The notes under the pieces were generated by a model. That model saw nothing but the letters and a program-made list of their open reading frames with translations, was not told where the DNA came from and ran no database searches. This document shows positions 2,466 through 42,538 of a DNA stretch of 64,000 bases, in pieces. The stretch lies in the sequence record PV745554.1. The stretch is one strand, 5' to 3'. Made by a program: the position numbers and the translations under genes. The first letter of the stretch is position 1. Each line of letters opens with the position of its first letter.

Positions 2466-2533
2466 CTCCTCTATGTCGTCGTCTCGACCCTTCTAGGTGG
2501 AGGTTCCCGTTCTGTCAACACACAACCGCCAAC
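2466..2533 (-). promoter_or_regulatory. sigma70 promoter cassette (leftward copy)
   Basis: Minus strand reads GTTGGCGGTTGTGTG-TTGACA-N17-TAGAAG...GACGACATAG-AGGAG-GTG. Confidence 0.8.
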
Positions 2534-4925: not shown

Positions 4926-5173
4926 GCCGTGGGGTCCTTCTTGCGGGCGGTGTAGTGGAACTCGTCGTGCATGCGCCCGTCCAGGGTGACCTCGTAGCCG
5001 GGACCCAGTTCAGCCAGGATGCGCGCCTCGATCTCGGAGAAGTCGATGTTGGCCATTGCGCGCTCGGCCGCCACCGCCTGCTCCAGGAAGCTGCTCCTGA
5101 TCTTGGCGCCGGCCTCGGTGCGGATCGGGATGTTCTGGATGGGCGGCTCGGACTTGGACAGACGCTCGCTCAT
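4922..5173 (-). CDS. small hypothetical protein with PolA motif-A-like peptide
   Basis: Start MSERLSK coupled to the gcrA stop; contains IDFSEIEARILAEL. Confidence 0.65.
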   Translation of the reverse strand: MSERLSKSEPPIQNIPIRTEAGAKIRSSFLEQAVAAERAMANIDFSEIEARILAELGPGYEVTLDGRMHDEFHYTARKKDPTA

Positions 5174-5721
5174 CAGGCCCTCTTGATCTTGCCGACGTGC
5201 GAGGGGCGCGTGGCGGCCTTGTAGACGAACGGGCGATAGGCCACGCGGTGGTGCTCGATGCAGTAGACGCCCTGCTCGGTGCGGCACCCGCAATGGCCGA
5301 AGTTCTGGTCGGTCGGATCGCCGTAGGGCCAGCGGCACATGCCGCGCGTCAGCTTCAGCGTCGGGACCACGGTCTCGGGGCGCACCGGGATCGGAGCCTG
5401 ACCCTCGGGGACCAGTTCGATCTTCGGCTTCGACGGCTTCTCGGCCTTGGGCTTGGTGACCTTCTTGGGCTTGGCGACCTTGACCTTCTTGATCTGGATG
5501 CCGTAGCCGCGCGTCTTCTTGCGGCGCTCCTGGAGCGGCAGGACCTTCTCGCCCAGTTCGCCCTTCTGGCGCAGGCGATCGCCCATGCCGCAGACGGCGC
5601 TCTTGCTGCGCGGCTCGCTCAGCATTTCCCCGATCTGCTTGGTCCCGACAGGCTCTGCCCAGAGCTTCTTCAGCAGGGCGATGTCCTCGGCCAGCCAATC
5701 CGACTTACGCTTCTTCACCAC
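5173..5721 (-). CDS. gcrA: GcrA-like cell-cycle transcription regulator
   Basis: N-terminal W...LKKLWAE...QIGEML...SKSAVCG HTH; C-terminal LTRGMCRWPYGDP...FGHCG...YCIEH. Confidence 0.92.
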   Translation of the reverse strand: MVKKRKSDWLAEDIALLKKLWAEPVGTKQIGEMLSEPRSKSAVCGMGDRLRQKGELGEKVLPLQERRKKTRGYGIQIKKVKVAKPKKVTKPKAEKPSKPKIELVPEGQAPIPVRPETVVPTLKLTRGMCRWPYGDPTDQNFGHCGCRTEQGVYCIEHHRVAYRPFVYKAATRPSHVGKIKRA

Positions 5722-11027: not shown

Positions 11028-11098
11028 TTGGCGTTAGAGTGTTGACAGTCATTGGGGCCTCCTCTATATCCACCCTCGACGACAACGAGGAGGCCCCG
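11027..11098 (+). promoter_or_regulatory. sigma70 promoter cassette with upstream 18-bp element
   Basis: GTTGGCGTTAGAGTG-TTGACA-N17-TATATC, CCTCG-ACGACAA-CGAGG hairpin with SD. Confidence 0.88.
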
Positions 11099-12847
11099 AT
11101 GACGACCGAGACCATGACCCTGAGCTTCCGTATCGAAGGCGCCGCCCTGGTGGAGCGCGCCCGCGACCGGGTCATCGAAGGCGCCTGGGAGCATGGCCTG
11201 CGCATCCTCGTCGAGGGTCTGCACGGCATGACCTACGAGATCGCCATCGACATCCTGATGGGCAAGTACACCCTGGGCGGCTGGTCCTCGGACCCCGAGG
11301 GCGTCTACCTCACCGAGCAAGACCCCGAGGACGAGACCTTCAAGCGCTACAAGGAGACGTTCGACTTCCAGTTCGCCGGCGTCTTCAAGGACGAGACGGG
11401 CCGCATCATGCGCCCCTACGCCATCGTCGACAGCTACGGCAAGAAGGACTTCGACTCCAAGTACCGCTACGACCACGCCCGCGCGCGCGGCTCGGACGAG
11501 TTCCTGTCGCGCCCGGTGCGCTACCACGACATCCTGGGCAAGGACCCGATCGACTGGGCCTATCGCGCCCTGCATTACGCCAACCTGCCGCAGCAAGACA
11601 TCGTCAAGCGGGTCAAGAACCCCGGCGAATACCACGGCACGATCCAGGAGATGGCCGCGCTATTCGAGGTCATCCACGACTACCCCAAGCTCCTGCTGCC
11701 CTACGTCACCAACAGCGCCCAGGAGGCCGTCGACAAAGCGGTCGCCTCCGGCCGCCGGATGGAGAAGCGCGGCTATGTCCACGAGTACGGCCCCAATGAT
11801 CCGTTCGCTGAGTTCCACGCCGTGACGACCACGGCGATCGACAACTTGCCGCCCCAGTGGGTGATCGAGAACCAAGCCTATGAGCCCCCGGCGCCGGTCA
11901 AGGCCCTGGAGGACTTCAAGCAGGGCGTCGCGAGCGCCCCTGATGAGGTCTCGGCGATGAACCGGATGATCGTCAAGGAGGTCAACGCCGGCACGAGCAT
12001 GTCGACCGCCATCGCCCTGGCCCGCGCCAAGATGGCGCTGATGGGTGGCATGGCCGAGGACCCTGAAGAGCGCATGTCGGCGATTAACGCCCACTTGGCG
12101 GCGGAGGCCGAGCGCGCCGAAGGCAAGTCCAACGAGACCTACCGCAAGGCGATCCAGGAGCAGGCCGCCGGCGACTACTTCGATCTCGTGTACACGGGTA
12201 AGGGTGGCGAGGAGGTGACCCTGAAGGTCCCGACCGCGCCGTTCGAGAAGTGGTGCCTGTGGCGCACCGCCGGCGCTCACCTCGCCAAGCCGTGGAAGCG
12301 CGTCACCTATTCGGGTCTGAAGTGCTTCGGCGACGACCCCTATCACACCGACTGGGTCATCGGCGCGGGCCTGGAGCCCGAGGATTGGCCGACCCGCAGC
12401 GACGACCCGCTGCACAAGGCCGCCTGGGACAAGCGCTTCGAGGTCGCCCAGAGCAAGATGGGCGGCAATCTGGTGGTCCTGCTGGGCACGGGCTTCGTGA
12501 CCGGCAAGATCAAGCACCTCAAGCCGGGCGAGACCCTGGAGCGGGGGCAGATCGGCGTGATCCGCAACGCTGGCCCCGACTACGTCCAGGCCGCCGTCAG
12601 CGCGATCGACAACAACGCCGCCCTGATCACCGAGAACGGCGGCAACGTCGCCCACCTCGTCACCGAGTTCCGGGACAAGCCGCTGCGTCTGGTGCGCATC
12701 GCCGACGCCCGCAAGATTTTCAAGGACGGCATGGAGGTCGACCTCGACCTGGATAAGGCATGGCGCCGTATCTACGAAGGCTCGCGCGGTCCCGCGCCGG
12801 GTGACCTCTACCTGCCGCCGGAATGGGAGATTCAAGATGACGCATGA
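11099..12847 (+). CDS. protein with C-terminal PEP-utilising-enzyme mobile (phosphohistidine swivel) domain
   Basis: GTGFVTGKIKHL...IGVIRNAGPDY...ALITENGGNVAHLVTEFRD...IFKDGMEVDLD matches the ITExGGxxSH signature. Confidence 0.75.
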   Translation: MTTETMTLSFRIEGAALVERARDRVIEGAWEHGLRILVEGLHGMTYEIAIDILMGKYTLGGWSSDPEGVYLTEQDPEDETFKRYKETFDFQFAGVFKDETGRIMRPYAIVDSYGKKDFDSKYRYDHARARGSDEFLSRPVRYHDILGKDPIDWAYRALHYANLPQQDIVKRVKNPGEYHGTIQEMAALFEVIHDYPKLLLPYVTNSAQEAVDKAVASGRRMEKRGYVHEYGPNDPFAEFHAVTTTAIDNLPPQWVIENQAYEPPAPVKALEDFKQGVASAPDEVSAMNRMIVKEVNAGTSMSTAIALARAKMALMGGMAEDPEERMSAINAHLAAEAERAEGKSNETYRKAIQEQAAGDYFDLVYTGKGGEEVTLKVPTAPFEKWCLWRTAGAHLAKPWKRVTYSGLKCFGDDPYHTDWVIGAGLEPEDWPTRSDDPLHKAAWDKRFEVAQSKMGGNLVVLLGTGFVTGKIKHLKPGETLERGQIGVIRNAGPDYVQAAVSAIDNNAALITENGGNVAHLVTEFRDKPLRLVRIADARKIFKDGMEVDLDLDKAWRRIYEGSRGPAPGDLYLPPEWEIQDDA

Positions 12848-13133
12848 ACTGATTATGGTCCAGGTGGGTGGGCAAGCCCATTCGCACTTCTCGATCGAGA
12901 CGCGCGAGGCCGAGGTGCCGGGCGGAAAGCTCTACATCACCACGGCGCATGCCGGCGAGAACTGCGAGGCCATATCGGTCGCCCAGACCTTCGTGCCGAC
13001 GCCGCCGCCGTCTAAGGTCGTGACCATCCCCGACGAGGTGCTGCGCGACCTGATGAGCCGCAAGGACGTCGCCAGCGGGCGCTCGCTGCTCAAGAAGTGG
13101 CTGTTCGCCCACGGCCTGGAGCTTGAGGCCTGA
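12837..13133 (+). CDS. hypothetical protein
   Basis: ATG after GGGAG. Confidence 0.7.
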   Translation: MTHELIMVQVGGQAHSHFSIETREAEVPGGKLYITTAHAGENCEAISVAQTFVPTPPPSKVVTIPDEVLRDLMSRKDVASGRSLLKKWLFAHGLELEA

Positions 13134-20559: not shown

Positions 20560-21099
20560 ATGATCTCCAACCGCCTCGACTTCACCAGCAACGATCTCTG
20601 GCCGCCCAAGGTCGACTACGAGATGAAGAAGCTGCGCTACGACACCGCGCTCGACGCGCTGGAGATCGTCCATCCCAAGAACCGCCTGGGCAACCGGGTC
20701 GACGTCTCCCACATCTGCTCCTACCTGATGAACGGCCGCGTCAAGGGCGTGCTCGACCACATCGCCAGCACCGGCGTCGAGGACCCGCGCGAGCAGACCT
20801 TCAAAATCCTGCGCATCCTGGAGAGCCAGGAGTTCGTCACCAATGACGGTGGCGATTGGTCGCTGACCGCCACGGGCGCGATCTGGCATCTGGTCGCTGA
20901 CAACCACCCTTCCGGCTGGGCCGAACTGGGCGCCCTGCTCCAGGACATCCGCCTGCAATGGTGGTCGCGCGCCGCGATCACCAAGGCCATCCAGGAAACC
21001 CGCTATTTTTCGCTGCGTCCGGGGCATGATGTGCTGAGCGTCGCCTTTGATCTCACGGCGCTTCAACAGCCGCTCGACGGGTGGAACGGATGGCGCTGA
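20560..21099 (+). CDS. hypothetical protein, winged-helix-like centre
   Basis: ILRILESQEFVTNDGGDWSLTATG. Confidence 0.7.
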   Translation: MISNRLDFTSNDLWPPKVDYEMKKLRYDTALDALEIVHPKNRLGNRVDVSHICSYLMNGRVKGVLDHIASTGVEDPREQTFKILRILESQEFVTNDGGDWSLTATGAIWHLVADNHPSGWAELGALLQDIRLQWWSRAAITKAIQETRYFSLRPGHDVLSVAFDLTALQQPLDGWNGWR

Positions 21100-21629
21100 G
21101 CGAGGAGGCCTGGGACAGCCTGATCCTCGACCTGCGCAACGCTGTCGAGGCCGAGGATCGCGAGGCCTGGGACGAGGCGATCCAGGCCCTGGAGAACGCC
21201 TTCGACGAGCATGTCGACGGCCCGCTGGAGACCCACCCCAACACCCTGGCCTGGAAGAAGAGCGCCGACGAACGCAAGCGCTTCCTGGCGGGCTGGTCGT
21301 ACTGGGGTAGCGGCGCCCGCGATGTGCCGGCCGAGTACAAGGGCGACATGGTCTTCAACCGGGGCCGCAGTGCCGCCGCCACCGCCCAGGACATGAGCGG
21401 CCTGCACCGGACCCTGGCGTCCTGCAAGCATCCGCAGTCCTACCGGATCGAAGGCGGCGACAATCTGCACCTGCCGCGCTACCCGGCGGTCTACGGCTCC
21501 TACGAGGTCCACATCTGCCGCCTCTGTCGCGGGTGGAAGACGATCGGCCACGGCGAGCGCCAATGGCACGAGGGGCCGTATTTCGACGCCTACGAGAAGG
21601 CGATGCGTGAGGAAGAGGAGCGCTGCTGA
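21090..21629 (+). CDS. hypothetical protein
   Basis: ORF coupled to the phosphatase gene. Confidence 0.7.
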   Translation: MALSEEAWDSLILDLRNAVEAEDREAWDEAIQALENAFDEHVDGPLETHPNTLAWKKSADERKRFLAGWSYWGSGARDVPAEYKGDMVFNRGRSAAATAQDMSGLHRTLASCKHPQSYRIEGGDNLHLPRYPAVYGSYEVHICRLCRGWKTIGHGERQWHEGPYFDAYEKAMREEEERC

Positions 21630-22321
21630 TGCTCTACGTGTTCGGGGACATCCACGGCCGCATGGACCTGCTGGAGAAGGCGCGCCACGCCATCCGTGTA
21701 CGCGGCGACGCCACGCGCATGATCTTCCTGGGCGACTATGTCGATCGCGGCCCGCAGAGCCGCGAGGTGGTCGAGGCCGTGATGGAGCTTCACCGCCAGG
21801 GCGAGATCGCCCTCAAGGGCAACCACGAGCAGATGATGGTCGATAGCTGGCGAATCGCCAACTACGGCGCGCTCTCCAAGATGTGGGTCAGCAACGGCGG
21901 CAAGCAGACCCTGAAGTCCTACGGCGCCGGCGACAACGCCTGGAACGCCCAGTGGGACATGATCCCCCAGGAGCATATCGACTGGATGGATGGCCTACCA
22001 ACCATGCACGTCACGCCCGGCCGGGTCTTCGTGCATGCCGGGCTGATGCCGGGCGTCCCGCTTGAGCAGCAGGACGAGGAGTGGACCCTGTGGATCAGGG
22101 ACCGCTTCCTGCTGGGCAAGCCGGGCGACTTCACCCACCACGTGATCCACGGCCACACCCACACCGTGCCGGTCTTCAAGGAGGAGCCGTCCGAGCCGGA
22201 GCTTCTGCCCCACCGGACCAACCTCGACACCGGCGCGTTCTTCACCGGCGTCCTGGGCGTGGGCGTCTTCGATCCGGACGAGACGGCCGGCCCGGTCGAG
22301 GTGCTCAAGATCACGGTGTGA
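21629..22321 (+). CDS. calcineurin-like metallophosphoesterase (Ser/Thr protein phosphatase, lambda NinI/PrpA-like)
   Basis: GDIHG, GDYVDRG, GNHE, FVHAG, HGHT, NLDTG motifs. Confidence 0.95.
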   Translation: MLYVFGDIHGRMDLLEKARHAIRVRGDATRMIFLGDYVDRGPQSREVVEAVMELHRQGEIALKGNHEQMMVDSWRIANYGALSKMWVSNGGKQTLKSYGAGDNAWNAQWDMIPQEHIDWMDGLPTMHVTPGRVFVHAGLMPGVPLEQQDEEWTLWIRDRFLLGKPGDFTHHVIHGHTHTVPVFKEEPSEPELLPHRTNLDTGAFFTGVLGVGVFDPDETAGPVEVLKITV

Positions 22322-35411: not shown

Positions 35412-35936
35412 ATGGGCCTGACGGGGTGCTGCTTTGCGCTCCTGACGGCCGGCTCGGTCGCCTTCGCGGTTGACCGTGGGGGCAGGGCGCTCAAGACGAG
35501 CGGCCTGCTCCTCTTCGCCACCTGGGCGTTTTCGGTGACCGTTGGGTCGACCCTCGTGGCGGGCTACAAGCCCTACATCTACGCCTGGGTCGATGGCATG
35601 TTCGCCGGCGCCATCGGCGTCATGTTGACGGCTCGCTTCCAGCGCTGGCGCGCCGGGCTCTTCGCCCTGGCGATCCTCCAGATGGTGCTCCATCTGGCGA
35701 TGATTGGCATCTGGGACTTCTCGCTGGCGGCGCGCCGCCTTCACGTCTTCTCGCTCAACCTCACCTACGGCCTGGAACTCTTCGTCCTCACCATCGGGGC
35801 GGCGGCCTATCGTCCAGGCGAGCGCGACGACGTGCCGGAGATCATCGAGGTCCAGCACCACATCGTCGGCAAGGATGACGGGACCCTACTCGACTGGCTT
35901 GAGTGTGTTGACAAAGCCAGACGACCCGTCCTATAA
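35412..35936 (+). CDS. multi-pass membrane protein
   Basis: About five hydrophobic segments. Confidence 0.75.
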   Translation: MGLTGCCFALLTAGSVAFAVDRGGRALKTSGLLLFATWAFSVTVGSTLVAGYKPYIYAWVDGMFAGAIGVMLTARFQRWRAGLFALAILQMVLHLAMIGIWDFSLAARRLHVFSLNLTYGLELFVLTIGAAAYRPGERDDVPEIIEVQHHIVGKDDGTLLDWLECVDKARRPVL

Positions 35937-41568: not shown

Positions 41569-41918
41569 AGTACAAGTGGATGGCCAACCCCTACTACGCC
41601 CAGATAGGGTTCTCGCCCCATCAGGCGCGCTACTGGGACGTCGAGAAAGCCATGGTCCTCAACCTGTGGGACGACATCGGCCGCGTCGGCGGGCTCGAAG
41701 ACCCCAGCCACTGGAAGCTTGTCTGGAGGCCCTTGCAAGTGGGCCGCGAAGGGCGATATGTCCTGGTCACCGCCCAGGCTGGAATCGCCTACCCCATGGC
41801 GTACCCAAAGGGCTATCGCGGCGCGATCGTGGAGATCGCCGCCGATGAGGACTGCCGGCTGCGGCCGACGGTGCGGGACGAGACCGGGCGGATTCTGGAG
41901 TATCGGGGCGTCCAGTGA
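41565..41918 (+). CDS. hypothetical protein
   Basis: ATGA overlap after GGAGG. Confidence 0.7.
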   Translation: MKYKWMANPYYAQIGFSPHQARYWDVEKAMVLNLWDDIGRVGGLEDPSHWKLVWRPLQVGREGRYVLVTAQAGIAYPMAYPKGYRGAIVEIAADEDCRLRPTVRDETGRILEYRGVQ

Positions 41919-42538
41919 AGAGCGATTGGCGCGAGACCTTGGCGGCGGCGTTCGACCGGCCCCTCCCCGTGGAGGAGCCGGTGGCGGACCCCTATGCCTT
42001 CGATCCCAACGCGCCGCCGCTGATCCTCGACCTCACCCCGGACGAGAAGCTGTCGCTGACCGAGTACCGCTGGGCGGCGCTGGACGCGTCGGGCGCGGTC
42101 ATGGGCGAATTCTGGGCGATCTCCCAGGCGGCCGAGGCGCTCGCCACCTTCCTCTACCCAGGCTTGGCCAGCTACGCGCGCGGCGGGCACACCGGCCGGC
42201 TCAAGGCCAACCGCCTGCGCCGGCTGAGCGAGGCCCAGAACTGGCGCTGCTGCTACTGCCATGGGCAGATGCGCATGCCCCACGACTGCGACGGCCCCAA
42301 CGAGCCGGACATGGCGACGCTGGAGCACGTCACCCGCGTCACCGATGGCGGTGGTAGCACCTGGGACAACCTGATCGCCGCCTGCCAGACCTGCAACTCC
42401 CATCGCGGGAGCGTCATGCCCCTGAAGTGGTGGAAGCTGCGCCAGAAGCTCCTCCCCGATTGGCCGGCCTGCTCGCCGATCACCGACGCGGCCCGCTACG
42501 CCCTGCGCGGCTATGGGCTCTTGCGGCGCGGGTGGTGA
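41915..42538 (+). CDS. HNH endonuclease
   Basis: CCYCH...ATLEHV...GGGSTWDNLIAACQTCNSHRG. Confidence 0.9.
   Translation: MKSDWRETLAAAFDRPLPVEEPVADPYAFDPNAPPLILDLTPDEKLSLTEYRWAALDASGAVMGEFWAISQAAEALATFLYPGLASYARGGHTGRLKANRLRRLSEAQNWRCCYCHGQMRMPHDCDGPNEPDMATLEHVTRVTDGGGSTWDNLIAACQTCNSHRGSVMPLKWWKLRQKLLPDWPACSPITDAARYALRGYGLLRRGW

What the first reader, a model, noticed from the sequence alone, without database searches (positions are those of the whole stretch)
11099..12847. 582-aa protein ending in a phosphohistidine swivel domain, a possible tap into PTS/PEP signalling
Seen: the last ~120 aa match the PEP-utilising-enzyme mobile domain (GxVTG...ITENGGNVAH...DGMEV) and keep the His. I do not recognise the preceding ~460 aa, and no PEP- or nucleotide-binding domain is apparent. 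Known: this His carries the phosphoryl group in enzyme I, PPDK, PEP synthase and rifampin phosphotransferase. In Caulobacter the PTS-Ntr relay controls SpoT/(p)ppGpp and the G1-S transition. Inference: the protein could be a phosphate sink or donor for host phosphotransfer, or deliver phosphate to a substrate held by a novel N-terminal domain.
Basis: partly seen in the sequence, partly recalled or inferred. Interest (0 to 1): 0.7.

Follow-up and report, generated by a model that had tools for sequence, protein, structure and literature searches.

The report
Orphan phage phosphohistidine swivel protein
This Caulobacter phage gene encodes one member of a large, uncharacterised, mostly phage-borne protein family that joins a genuine phosphate-carrying "swivel" histidine domain to two conserved modules with no detectable relatives, so it is probably a new kind of phosphotransferase whose substrate is unknown.

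Summary

Residues 1-452 model confidently (pLDDT 83.6). They match nothing outside the protein's own family in PDB, AlphaFold DB clusters, BFVD or the ESM Atlas. No ATP-grasp, PEP-binding barrel or HPr-binding subdomain is present.

The family is large: 624 clusters at 50% identity with E<=1e-30. It sits mainly in large or jumbo phages and phage-like megaplasmids of many hosts, nearly always with the same three-part architecture and with no conserved neighbouring gene.

A second site, K408-x3-D412-D-x2-H416-x-D418, is as conserved as the swivel His.

Best reading, inferred and not shown: a self-contained phosphotransferase in which His519 shuttles phosphate between two new sites. The Caulobacter PTS-Ntr/ppGpp idea has no specific support. 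This is a new variant of a known kind, of moderate interest, and the function is untested.

The parts
11039..11098 (+). Promoter-like element plus conserved leader directly upstream of the gene. GTGTTGACAG lies at 11039-11048, with TTGACA at 11042-11047. A 17-nt spacer separates it from TATATC at 11065-11070. The leader CTCGACGACAACGAGGAGG lies at 11075-11093, with Shine-Dalgarno GGAGG at 11089-11093.
   Evidence: Sequence read. It is one of 12 copies of GTGTTGACAG (at most 1 mismatch) in the window against 2.1 expected. Eleven of the 12 lie 47-95 nt before a start codon (nine of them 55-60 nt); the copy at 35905 lies inside annotated genes. The 47443 copy lacks the conserved leader. The cassette is conserved in CcrRogue, Karma, CcrBL10 and phiCbK although the proteins are only about 65% identical. 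Promoter function is inferred.
11099..12847 (+). Coding sequence of the 582-aa protein (BL64_246; orthologue of CcrRogue gp242 and phiCbK gp239), including the stop codon at 12845-12847.
   Evidence: It is a full-length member of PHROG 11532, 'unknown function'. Against CcrRogue, 16 codons differ synonymously and 10 non-synonymously out of 583, roughly consistent with purifying selection.
11099..11794 (+). N-terminal module, aa 1-232: three short helices followed by an alpha+beta part. Near-invariant residues are F10, G14, R22, G55, P106, D117, R156, Y160 and P196. No detectable fold relatives.
   Evidence: Model pLDDT is about 95-98 over aa 11-110 and 86-96 over aa 181-230. There is no PDB, AFDB, BFVD or Atlas match outside the family and no PDB sequence match. 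Conservation. It rarely occurs alone (P0164, P0165) or with another tail (P0163).
11795..12130 (+). Variable acidic, mostly helical linker, aa 233-344. It is 112 aa here, against a family median of 49 aa and a range of 15-135.
12131..12454 (+). Central conserved module, aa 345-452: a helix, a beta-hairpin and a conserved loop. The signature is PxAPFxxW...W399...K408-x3-D412-D413-x2-H416-x-D418-W419, with KCFGDDPYHTDW at 12320-12355. H416 (12344-12346) and D418 (12350-12352) are invariant.
   Evidence: H416 and D418 are present in 162 of 162 representatives, D412 in 161, K408 in 158. pLDDT is 82-98. There is no PDB sequence hit even at E<=10 and no fold hit. Its role as a second catalytic or docking site is inferred.
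12455..12778 (+). Phosphohistidine swivel (PEP-utilising enzyme mobile) domain, aa 453-560. The motif ITENGGNVAHLVTEFRD lies at 12626-12676. The putative phospho-acceptor His519 is at 12653-12655.
   Evidence: His519 and Gly514 are invariant. The residue two positions before the His is L/M/V in 149 of 162 sequences and Thr in only 7, so the T-S-H regulatory motif of PPDK, PEPS and EI is absent.
12779..12844 (+). Unconserved, predicted disordered C-terminal tail, aa 561-582.
   Evidence: pLDDT 28-41. About 80% of aligned positions are gaps in the family.
12837..13133 (+). Downstream 98-aa gene (BL64_247, PHROG 12291, unknown function). It overlaps the end of the target by 11 nt and is probably co-transcribed. 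It is conserved only among phiCbK-like phages.
   Evidence: It is not found next to family members elsewhere.

Best explanation
BL64_246 is a member of a large, mostly phage-borne family of single-chain phosphotransferases built on a C-terminal phosphohistidine swivel domain.

Proposed mechanism. His519 is phosphorylated at one conserved site and swings on the helix 437-454 and its linker to a second conserved site, where the phosphoryl group passes to an acceptor. One site would be the N-terminal module (R22, D117, R156, Y160). The other would be the central module (K408, D412, D413, H416, D418), which looks like a metal or phosphate-binding cluster. This layout, donor module then acceptor module then C-terminal His domain, mirrors rifampin phosphotransferase, but both partner modules are folds with no detectable relatives.

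The gene has its own copy of the phage's repeated promoter/leader cassette and needs no conserved phage partner. The likely target is therefore a host small molecule or host protein rather than another phage product.

Shown: the fold and conservation of the swivel domain, the three-module architecture, the lack of known donor domains, and the distribution. Inferred: phosphorylation of His519, which module is donor and which is acceptor, and the identity of donor and substrate.

For: A second set of residues is equally conserved: H416 and D418 in 162 of 162, D412 in 161, K408 in 158. A third cluster sits in the N-module: R22 in 156, D117 in 158, Y160 in 157. The modules are separated by a linker that varies in length from 15 to 135 aa. 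This is what one expects of two active sites served by a mobile carrier.

160 of 162 representatives keep all three modules. No gene is shared by more than 4 of the 41 loci compared (34 of them with the family gene called). The 56.7-kb Vibrio phage 1.232.O carries the gene but has no annotated ATP-grasp, PEP-binding or PTS gene.

All three upstream parts are acidic, with pI about 5, which argues against a nucleic-acid substrate.

The conserved promoter/leader cassette is documented. RNA-seq assemblies of a phiCbK-like phage infection cover the orthologous region (this shows presence only).
Against: No nucleotide-, PEP- or phosphate-binding fold or motif could be recognised in residues 1-452 by Pfam, PDB sequence search, Foldseek, VIA-align or the Atlas, so the phosphate donor is unknown.

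The query itself does not reach any Pfam or NCBIfam threshold. No biochemical data exist for any family member.

It could not be checked whether His519 can reach either site.

Pyruvate kinase carries the same C-terminal domain without a proven carrier role.
Confidence: 0.45

Rival explanations
1. This is the first reader's main idea: a tap into host phosphotransfer. The protein has no donor site of its own. Its swivel domain would dock onto a host PEP- or ATP-utilising enzyme (EI/EI-Ntr, PPDK or PEP synthase) and be phosphorylated in trans. It would then drain phosphate from the host relay or feed phosphate into it. The upstream modules would target or regulate this.
Against: The closest relatives are C-terminal RPH/PEPS-type His domains, not EI. 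The HPr-binding helical insert of EI is missing. The regulatory Thr two residues before the His is absent. The strict conservation of two further polar clusters is not explained by a passive sink. The family spans phages of very different hosts. Trans-phosphorylation of a foreign swivel domain by EI or PPDK has no precedent known to me.
Confidence: 0.15
2. Non-catalytic use of the swivel fold. As with the extra C-terminal domain of Bacillus and Staphylococcus pyruvate kinases, the domain would serve as a regulatory or binding module. It might act as a decoy that plugs the active site of a host swivel-dependent enzyme, without carrying phosphate through a reaction cycle.
Against: His519, Gly514 and the GG...H...R-E motif are invariant or nearly so across a family whose mean identity is about 22%. 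That is typical of catalytic residues. The equally invariant H416/D418 site suggests chemistry rather than binding alone.
Confidence: 0.12
3. Nucleic-acid end-healing kinase. The protein would phosphorylate 5'-OH RNA or tRNA ends as part of phage RNA repair, working with RNA ligases, Thg1-like enzymes and phosphoesterases.
For: Thg1-like genes lie 3-6 kb upstream in four related loci. RNA-ligase and DNA-ligase genes were found among neighbours. On a Variovorax megaplasmid an RNA ligase and a HAD hydrolase lie within 3 kb of the gene.
Against: These neighbours are present in a minority of loci and are not shared between subgroups. The window and phage 1.232.O have none nearby. All three upstream modules are acidic, pI about 5, which is unusual for RNA-binding enzymes. 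Huge phages are generally rich in such genes, so co-location may be incidental.
Confidence: 0.06

Closest known systems
Rifampin phosphotransferase (RPH; e.g. Listeria RPH-Lm, PDB 5fbs/5fbt/5fbu/5hv1) and the RPH-like 'PEP synthase' family PRK06241
   Different: This protein has no ATP-grasp (PPDK_N) domain and no recognisable rifampin-binding domain. NCBIfam RPH models score 15-19 bits against cut-offs of 999-1700, and only over the swivel. The protein is about 300 aa shorter. A language-model lead to PF27448 (Rph_4th, score 0.87) was not backed by Pfam, Foldseek or VIA-align.
PEP synthase and pyruvate phosphate dikinase (ATP-grasp + swivel + PEP/pyruvate TIM barrel)
   Same: The phosphohistidine carrier fold and motif are shared. 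So is the concept of a His shuttling between two sites.
   Different: Both flanking catalytic domains are absent. Here the swivel is terminal rather than central. The regulatory Thr of the T-S/C-H motif is absent.
PTS Enzyme I / EI-Ntr (PtsI, PtsP)
   Different: There is no HPr/NPr-binding helical subdomain inserted in the swivel, no PEP-binding C-domain and no GAF domain. No EI chain appeared among the sequence-profile hits at E<=1.
Extra C-terminal (PEPut) domain of Geobacillus and Staphylococcus pyruvate kinase (PDB 2e28, 3t05)
   Different: There is no pyruvate kinase barrel upstream. The PK domain carries T-S-H (recalled from knowledge of the family). Its role in PK is regulatory.

Membership tests
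PEP-utilising enzyme mobile (phosphohistidine swivel) domain, Pfam PF00391 | Swivel alpha/beta fold | tested here: met
PEP-utilising enzyme mobile (phosphohistidine swivel) domain, Pfam PF00391 | Conserved phospho-acceptor His in the G-G-x-x-x-H...R-E motif | tested here: met
   GGNVAH519LVTEFRD is present. His519 and Gly514 occur in 162 of 162, Gly515 in 157 of 162, Arg525 in 107 of 162 and Glu/Asp526 in 136 of 162.
PEP-utilising enzyme mobile (phosphohistidine swivel) domain, Pfam PF00391 | Score above the Pfam gathering threshold | tested here: inconclusive
   The window protein gives no hit at E<=1. 14 of 21 close relatives do (best 2.7e-10), all five locus-encoded relatives tested score 32.7-46.7 bits against a cut-off of 23.1, and the family profile hits solved swivel domains at E 5e-8.
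PEP-utilising enzyme mobile (phosphohistidine swivel) domain, Pfam PF00391 | His is actually phosphorylated | not testable with these tools
   This needs biochemistry.
ATP-dependent dikinases (PPDK, PEP synthase, RPH, glucan water dikinase) | ATP-grasp nucleotide-binding domain (PF01326 PPDK_N) | tested here: not met
   There is no Pfam hit in the query or in 21 relatives. The confident N-terminal model gives no dikinase chain or entry among the Foldseek matches at E<=10 in PDB, AFDB clusters or BFVD, and none among the matches listed by VIA-align. The only signal is a language-model score of 0.73-0.80.
ATP-dependent dikinases (PPDK, PEP synthase) | PEP/pyruvate-binding TIM barrel (PF02896) | tested here: not met
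   The protein ends 22 residues after the swivel. There is no Pfam or fold hit.
ATP-dependent dikinases (PPDK, PEP synthase) | Regulatory Thr two residues before the catalytic His (T-S/C-H) | tested here: not met
   That position is Val here. In the family it is L/M/V in 149 of 162 and Thr in 7 of 162.
Rifampin phosphotransferase (NCBIfam NF041857 / NF000283) | Full-length match above the curated cut-off, with a rifampin-binding domain | tested here: not met
   The window protein does not hit the RPH models at all. Relatives score 15-19 bits against cut-offs of 999 and 1700, over the swivel only. The Rph_4th lead (0.87) is below the tool's 0.9 guide and is unsupported by Pfam or fold search.
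PTS Enzyme I / EI-Ntr | HPr/NPr-binding helical subdomain inserted in the swivel (PF05524) and a PEP-binding C-domain | tested here: not met
   The swivel is contiguous. Model residues 455-564 align to EI residues spread over 3-237, that is without the insert. There is no Pfam hit.
Known anti-phage defence components (PADLOC) | Match to any PADLOC model | tested here: not met
   No hit for the query or for three relatives at E<=0.01.

The most novel reading that the evidence does not exclude
The family is a previously unrecognised class of swivel-histidine enzymes. It would be a further architecture beside EI, the PPDK/PEPS type and the RPH type. In it, the phospho-carrier serves two catalytic modules of new fold, one of them centred on the invariant K-x3-DD-x2-H-x-D loop. 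Large phages would deploy it as a stand-alone enzyme to phosphorylate, and so inactivate or redirect, a widespread host metabolite, signal or protein, possibly as a counter-defence.
Probability: 0.35. Interest if true: 0.75.

Novelty: new variant of a known kind. Interest (0 to 1): 0.55.

Why it matters
Swivel-histidine enzymes are a small, well-studied set: EI, PPDK, PEP synthase, glucan water dikinase and rifampin phosphotransferase. In all of them the carrier domain works with an ATP-grasp domain, a PEP-binding barrel, or both.

This family has at least 600 clusters at 50% identity and lies almost entirely in phages and phage-like megaplasmids. It keeps the carrier and its His but replaces both partner domains with modules that have no detectable relatives.

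If it is active, it would define a new phosphoryl donor or acceptor chemistry and a new stand-alone host-manipulation or counter-defence enzyme common to large phages. It would also give a name to a sizeable piece of viral dark matter (PHROG 11532).

The genetics are tractable. phiCbK gp239 is an orthologue in a model phage-host pair.

Tried and rejected
1. Pfam, PHROGs, NCBIfam and PADLOC on the query and relatives gave only the swivel domain and PHROG 11532, 'unknown'.

2. PDB sequence searches with the whole family, the N-terminal 452 aa, the N-module alone and the central module alone gave nothing beyond the swivel. The remaining hits were coiled-coil noise from the linker.

3. The pLDDT-83.6 model of residues 1-452 was searched against PDB (Foldseek and VIA-align wide), AFDB clusters, BFVD and the ESM Atlas. 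Only the protein's own family and generic helical hairpins came back. The model has several domains, so a weak single-domain match could have been missed.

4. Language-model look-alikes point repeatedly to PF27448 (Rph_4th) and PPDK_N at scores of 0.73-0.87. I kept this as a lead only. It is below the tool's guide value and was contradicted by the Pfam and fold searches.

5. Conserved-neighbour analysis on 24 and then 41 loci found no shared neighbour. Thg1/DUF1552/UvrD, RNA ligase, DNA ligase and AAA genes occur only in subgroups.

6. The search for fusions or alternative architectures found nearly none. P0080 is a fragment at a contig end. P0162 lacks the swivel. P0163 carries a Cys-rich tail. 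P0164 and P0165 are the N-module alone.

7. The phiCbK RNA-seq timing table in PMC10688885 is truncated in the held copy, so no temporal class was obtained for gp239. Logan contigs show only that the region is present in RNA libraries.

8. Literature searches found no study of this family.

9. The long antisense ORFs over the gene, for example 11660-12835 (-), were dismissed as high-GC artefacts because they have no homologues of their own.

Full report
WHAT IS THERE

The window corresponds to the last 64 kb of Caulobacter phage BL64 (PV745554.1, 160635-224634; genus Poindextervirus, related to CcrRogue). This is an inference: the record's annotation coordinates coincide with the window ORFs, and the protein is 100% identical.

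The finding is gene BL64_246, 11099-12847 on the + strand, annotated 'hypothetical protein'. The longest ORF starts at GTG 11039. The true start is the ATG at 11099. It lies 5 nt after a GGAGG at 11089-11093, and it matches both the N-termini of all homologues and the database annotations.

The gene is conserved in all phiCbK-like phages, with 28 Caulobacter phage records. Against CcrRogue, 16 codons differ synonymously and 10 non-synonymously.

THE SWIVEL DOMAIN IS REAL

The single sequence misses Pfam altogether. Its only PDB sequence hit is the C-terminal domain of Geobacillus pyruvate kinase at E 0.3.

At family level the evidence is clear.
- PF00391 hits 14 of 21 relatives.
- A profile of the family hits rifampin phosphotransferase at E 4.8e-8. 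It also hits PEP synthases and pyruvate kinase, always over the swivel.

The motif reads ITENGGNVAH519LVTEFRD. Across 162 representatives that are mostly under 50% identical to one another, His519 and Gly514 never change.

The residue two positions before the His is hydrophobic, as in RPH. It is not the regulatory Thr of PPDK, PEPS or EI.

THE REST OF THE PROTEIN

An exhaustive profile search found 624 clusters at 50% identity with E<=1e-30. Of the 162 sequences examined, 160 have the same architecture:
- an N-module (aa 1-232);
- a variable acidic helical linker (15-135 aa; 112 aa here);
- a central module (aa 345-452);
- the swivel domain.

The central module carries the loop K408-x3-D412-D413-x2-H416-x-D418-W. 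H416 and D418 are invariant in 162 of 162, D412 is present in 161 and K408 in 158. This loop is as conserved as the phospho-His itself. The N-module has its own near-invariant polar set: R22, D117, R156 and Y160.

A second AlphaFold2 run on residues 1-452 with 76 diverse sequences gave mean pLDDT 83.6, with 95-98 over much of the N-module and 82-98 over the central module. The model was then searched widely.
- Foldseek against PDB: best E 2.2.
- AFDB clusters: only the family's own cluster below E 0.01; the next hit, an uncharacterised protein, had E 0.017 and TM 0.17.
- BFVD: only two family members, one of them the Vibrio phage VP-1 'PEP utilizing enzyme'.
- ESM Atlas: TM<=0.25.
- Profile searches of PDB sequences with each module alone: nothing.

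So there is no ATP-grasp, no PEP-binding barrel and no HPr-binding subdomain.

A protein-language-model search repeatedly placed the upstream part near clusters carrying PF27448 (Rph_4th) and PPDK_N, at scores of 0.73-0.87. This held even with the swivel removed and PF00391 clusters excluded. That is below the tool's own guide value and is not supported by Pfam or by fold comparison. I keep it as a lead that the family may be a very remote offshoot of RPH-like enzymes.

DISTRIBUTION AND CONTEXT

Relatives were found in the following places.
- Caulobacter, Brevundimonas and Vibrio phages and the 197-kb virus Rctr197k.
- 21 IMG/VR contigs, many of 100-578 kb.
- 36 metagenome loci.
- Only two of about 185,000 species genomes, both MAGs. 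This scan used a single peptide pattern.
- A few 270-1300 kb non-mobilizable 'plasmids'. Near the gene, the 910-kb Pseudomonas record shows mostly hypothetical proteins plus EF-Tu and a peptidyl-tRNA hydrolase, which to me looks phage-like.

No neighbouring gene is shared across loci. A Thg1-like enzyme, DUF1552 and a UvrD helicase lie upstream in one subgroup. RNA or DNA ligases and AAA ATPases occur elsewhere.

The 56.7-kb Vibrio phage 1.232.O, which has InterPro-based annotation, carries the gene but no recognisable partner.

In the window all neighbours are of unknown function. No fusions to known domains were seen.

All three upstream parts are acidic, with pI about 5.

EXPRESSION SIGNALS

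The 71-nt gap before the gene holds TTGACA, a 17-nt spacer, TATATC, and then the leader CTCGACGACAACGAGGAGG followed by the ATG. The core GTGTTGACAG occurs 12 times in the window against 2.1 expected. Eleven of the 12 copies lie 47-95 nt before a start codon (nine of them 55-60 nt); the copy at 35905 lies inside annotated genes. Ten + strand copies carry the CTCGACGA(C/T)AAC leader; the - strand copy at 2521 has a related GACGACGACA, and the 47443 copy has no such leader. The copy before this gene is conserved in CcrRogue, Karma, CcrBL10 and phiCbK, although the proteins have diverged to about 65% identity.

The gene therefore probably heads its own transcription unit. This is an inference.

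RNA-seq assemblies from a phiCbK-like infection contain the orthologous region on 23-45 kb contigs. That shows presence, not timing. The published timing table was truncated in the held copy.

HOW IT MOST LIKELY WORKS

Four observations point the same way:
- a strictly conserved carrier His;
- two further strictly conserved polar clusters in separate modules;
- a length-variable tether between those modules;
- the same domain order as in RPH (donor module, acceptor module, C-terminal His domain).

The most economical reading is a self-contained phosphotransferase. His519 would pick up a phosphoryl group at one site and deliver it at the other. The K/DD/H/D loop looks like a metal-phosphate site.

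Which module is donor, what the donor is and what the acceptor is all remain unknown. The acidic surfaces and the absence of a phage partner favour a small-molecule or protein target in the host. I put this reading at about 0.45.

RIVALS

It is not excluded. However, the domain is RPH-like rather than EI-like, it lacks the HPr-binding insert, and the family is not tied to any one host.
- A non-catalytic regulatory or decoy domain, as in pyruvate kinase (0.12). Invariance of the catalytic motif and of the second site argues against it.
- An RNA end-healing kinase (0.06). The neighbours are suggestive in only a minority of loci, and the protein is acidic.
- The remaining probability is for something not considered here.

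COMPARISON AND NOVELTY

The protein is a member of the swivel-domain superfamily by fold and motif. It fails the defining features of dikinases, Enzyme I, RPH and pyruvate kinase; see the membership table.

It works most like RPH in layout. It is best described as a new variant of a known kind: a known carrier with two unknown partner modules.

No paper in the searchable library treats this family.

VERDICT

Interest is moderate, at 0.55. This is a large uncharacterised phage family with a clear, cheap and decisive biochemical test, but no function has been demonstrated.

Noticed in passing
window 2512-2521(-), 5958, 5992, 7949, 11039, 16303, 24694, 29490, 32091, 34527, 35905, 47443 (+): A repeated promoter-plus-leader cassette of the form yTTGGC-N6-GTGTTGACAr-N15-17-CTAGAA/CTATAT...CTCGACGACAACGAGGAGGCCCCG-ATG. 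There are 12 copies of the core against 2.1 expected. Eleven lie 47-95 nt before a start codon; the copy at 35905 lies inside annotated genes, and the 47443 copy lacks the conserved leader. The cassette seems to divide the long + strand block of small genes into transcription units. It is not mentioned in the 2012 phiCbK genome paper.
   Followed up: partly
whole window: The window coordinates coincide with the annotation of Caulobacter phage BL64 (PV745554.1) 160635-224634, the right end of the genome. Nearly all of about 110 genes in the first 49 kb are 'hypothetical'. The annotated exceptions include a GcrA-like cell-cycle regulator (5173-5721, -), a Ser/Thr protein phosphatase (21629-22321), a pleckstrin-domain protein (21090-21629) and an HNH endonuclease (41915-42538).
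   Followed up: partly
window 12837-13133 (+): A 98-aa gene (PHROG 12291) overlaps the last 11 nt of the target gene, which suggests translational coupling. It is conserved only in phiCbK-like phages.
   Followed up: partly
L009:258-1079, L014:3058-3849, L022:1383-2207, L023:1552-2391: A Thg1-like (tRNA-His guanylyltransferase family, PF04446) gene lies upstream of the family member in a subgroup of large metagenomic phages. In L022 and L014 a UvrD-type helicase lies between it and the family member, and L022 also has a DUF1552 (HXXSHH) protein there.
   Followed up: partly
L071 (CP136011.1, 909,734-bp 'plasmid' of Pseudomonas sp. FeN3W) and L070 (Variovorax sp. SRS16 plasmid 2, 801 kb): These very large non-mobilizable 'plasmids' carry the family. 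The Pseudomonas record also carries EF-Tu, a peptidyl-tRNA hydrolase and RNase H among mostly hypothetical genes. The Variovorax record has an RNA ligase, a HAD hydrolase and an AAA ATPase near the gene. To me they look like huge phage-like elements.
   Followed up: no
P0163 (L068:1465-2721), P0164, P0165, P0162: Rare variants of the architecture exist. In P0163 the N-module is fused to a Cys-rich C-terminal half. P0164 and P0165 are 200-aa stand-alone N-modules. P0162 has the N-module and the central module without a swivel. These show that the modules are separable.
   Followed up: partly
P0017 (Mesorhizobium sp. B2-6-4, 226,208-bp contig): This homologue is labelled as bacterial, but it sits on a contig the size of a Dolichocephalovirinae genome. 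That fits the title of PMC12195562, which says such phages exist as episomal pseudolysogens in soil bacteria. I saw only the title and abstract.
   Followed up: no
window 11660-12835 (-) and other long antisense ORFs: Long ORFs lie on the opposite strand of real genes, for example 391 aa opposite the target. They are the usual artefact of 66% GC DNA and are not genes.
   Followed up: yes
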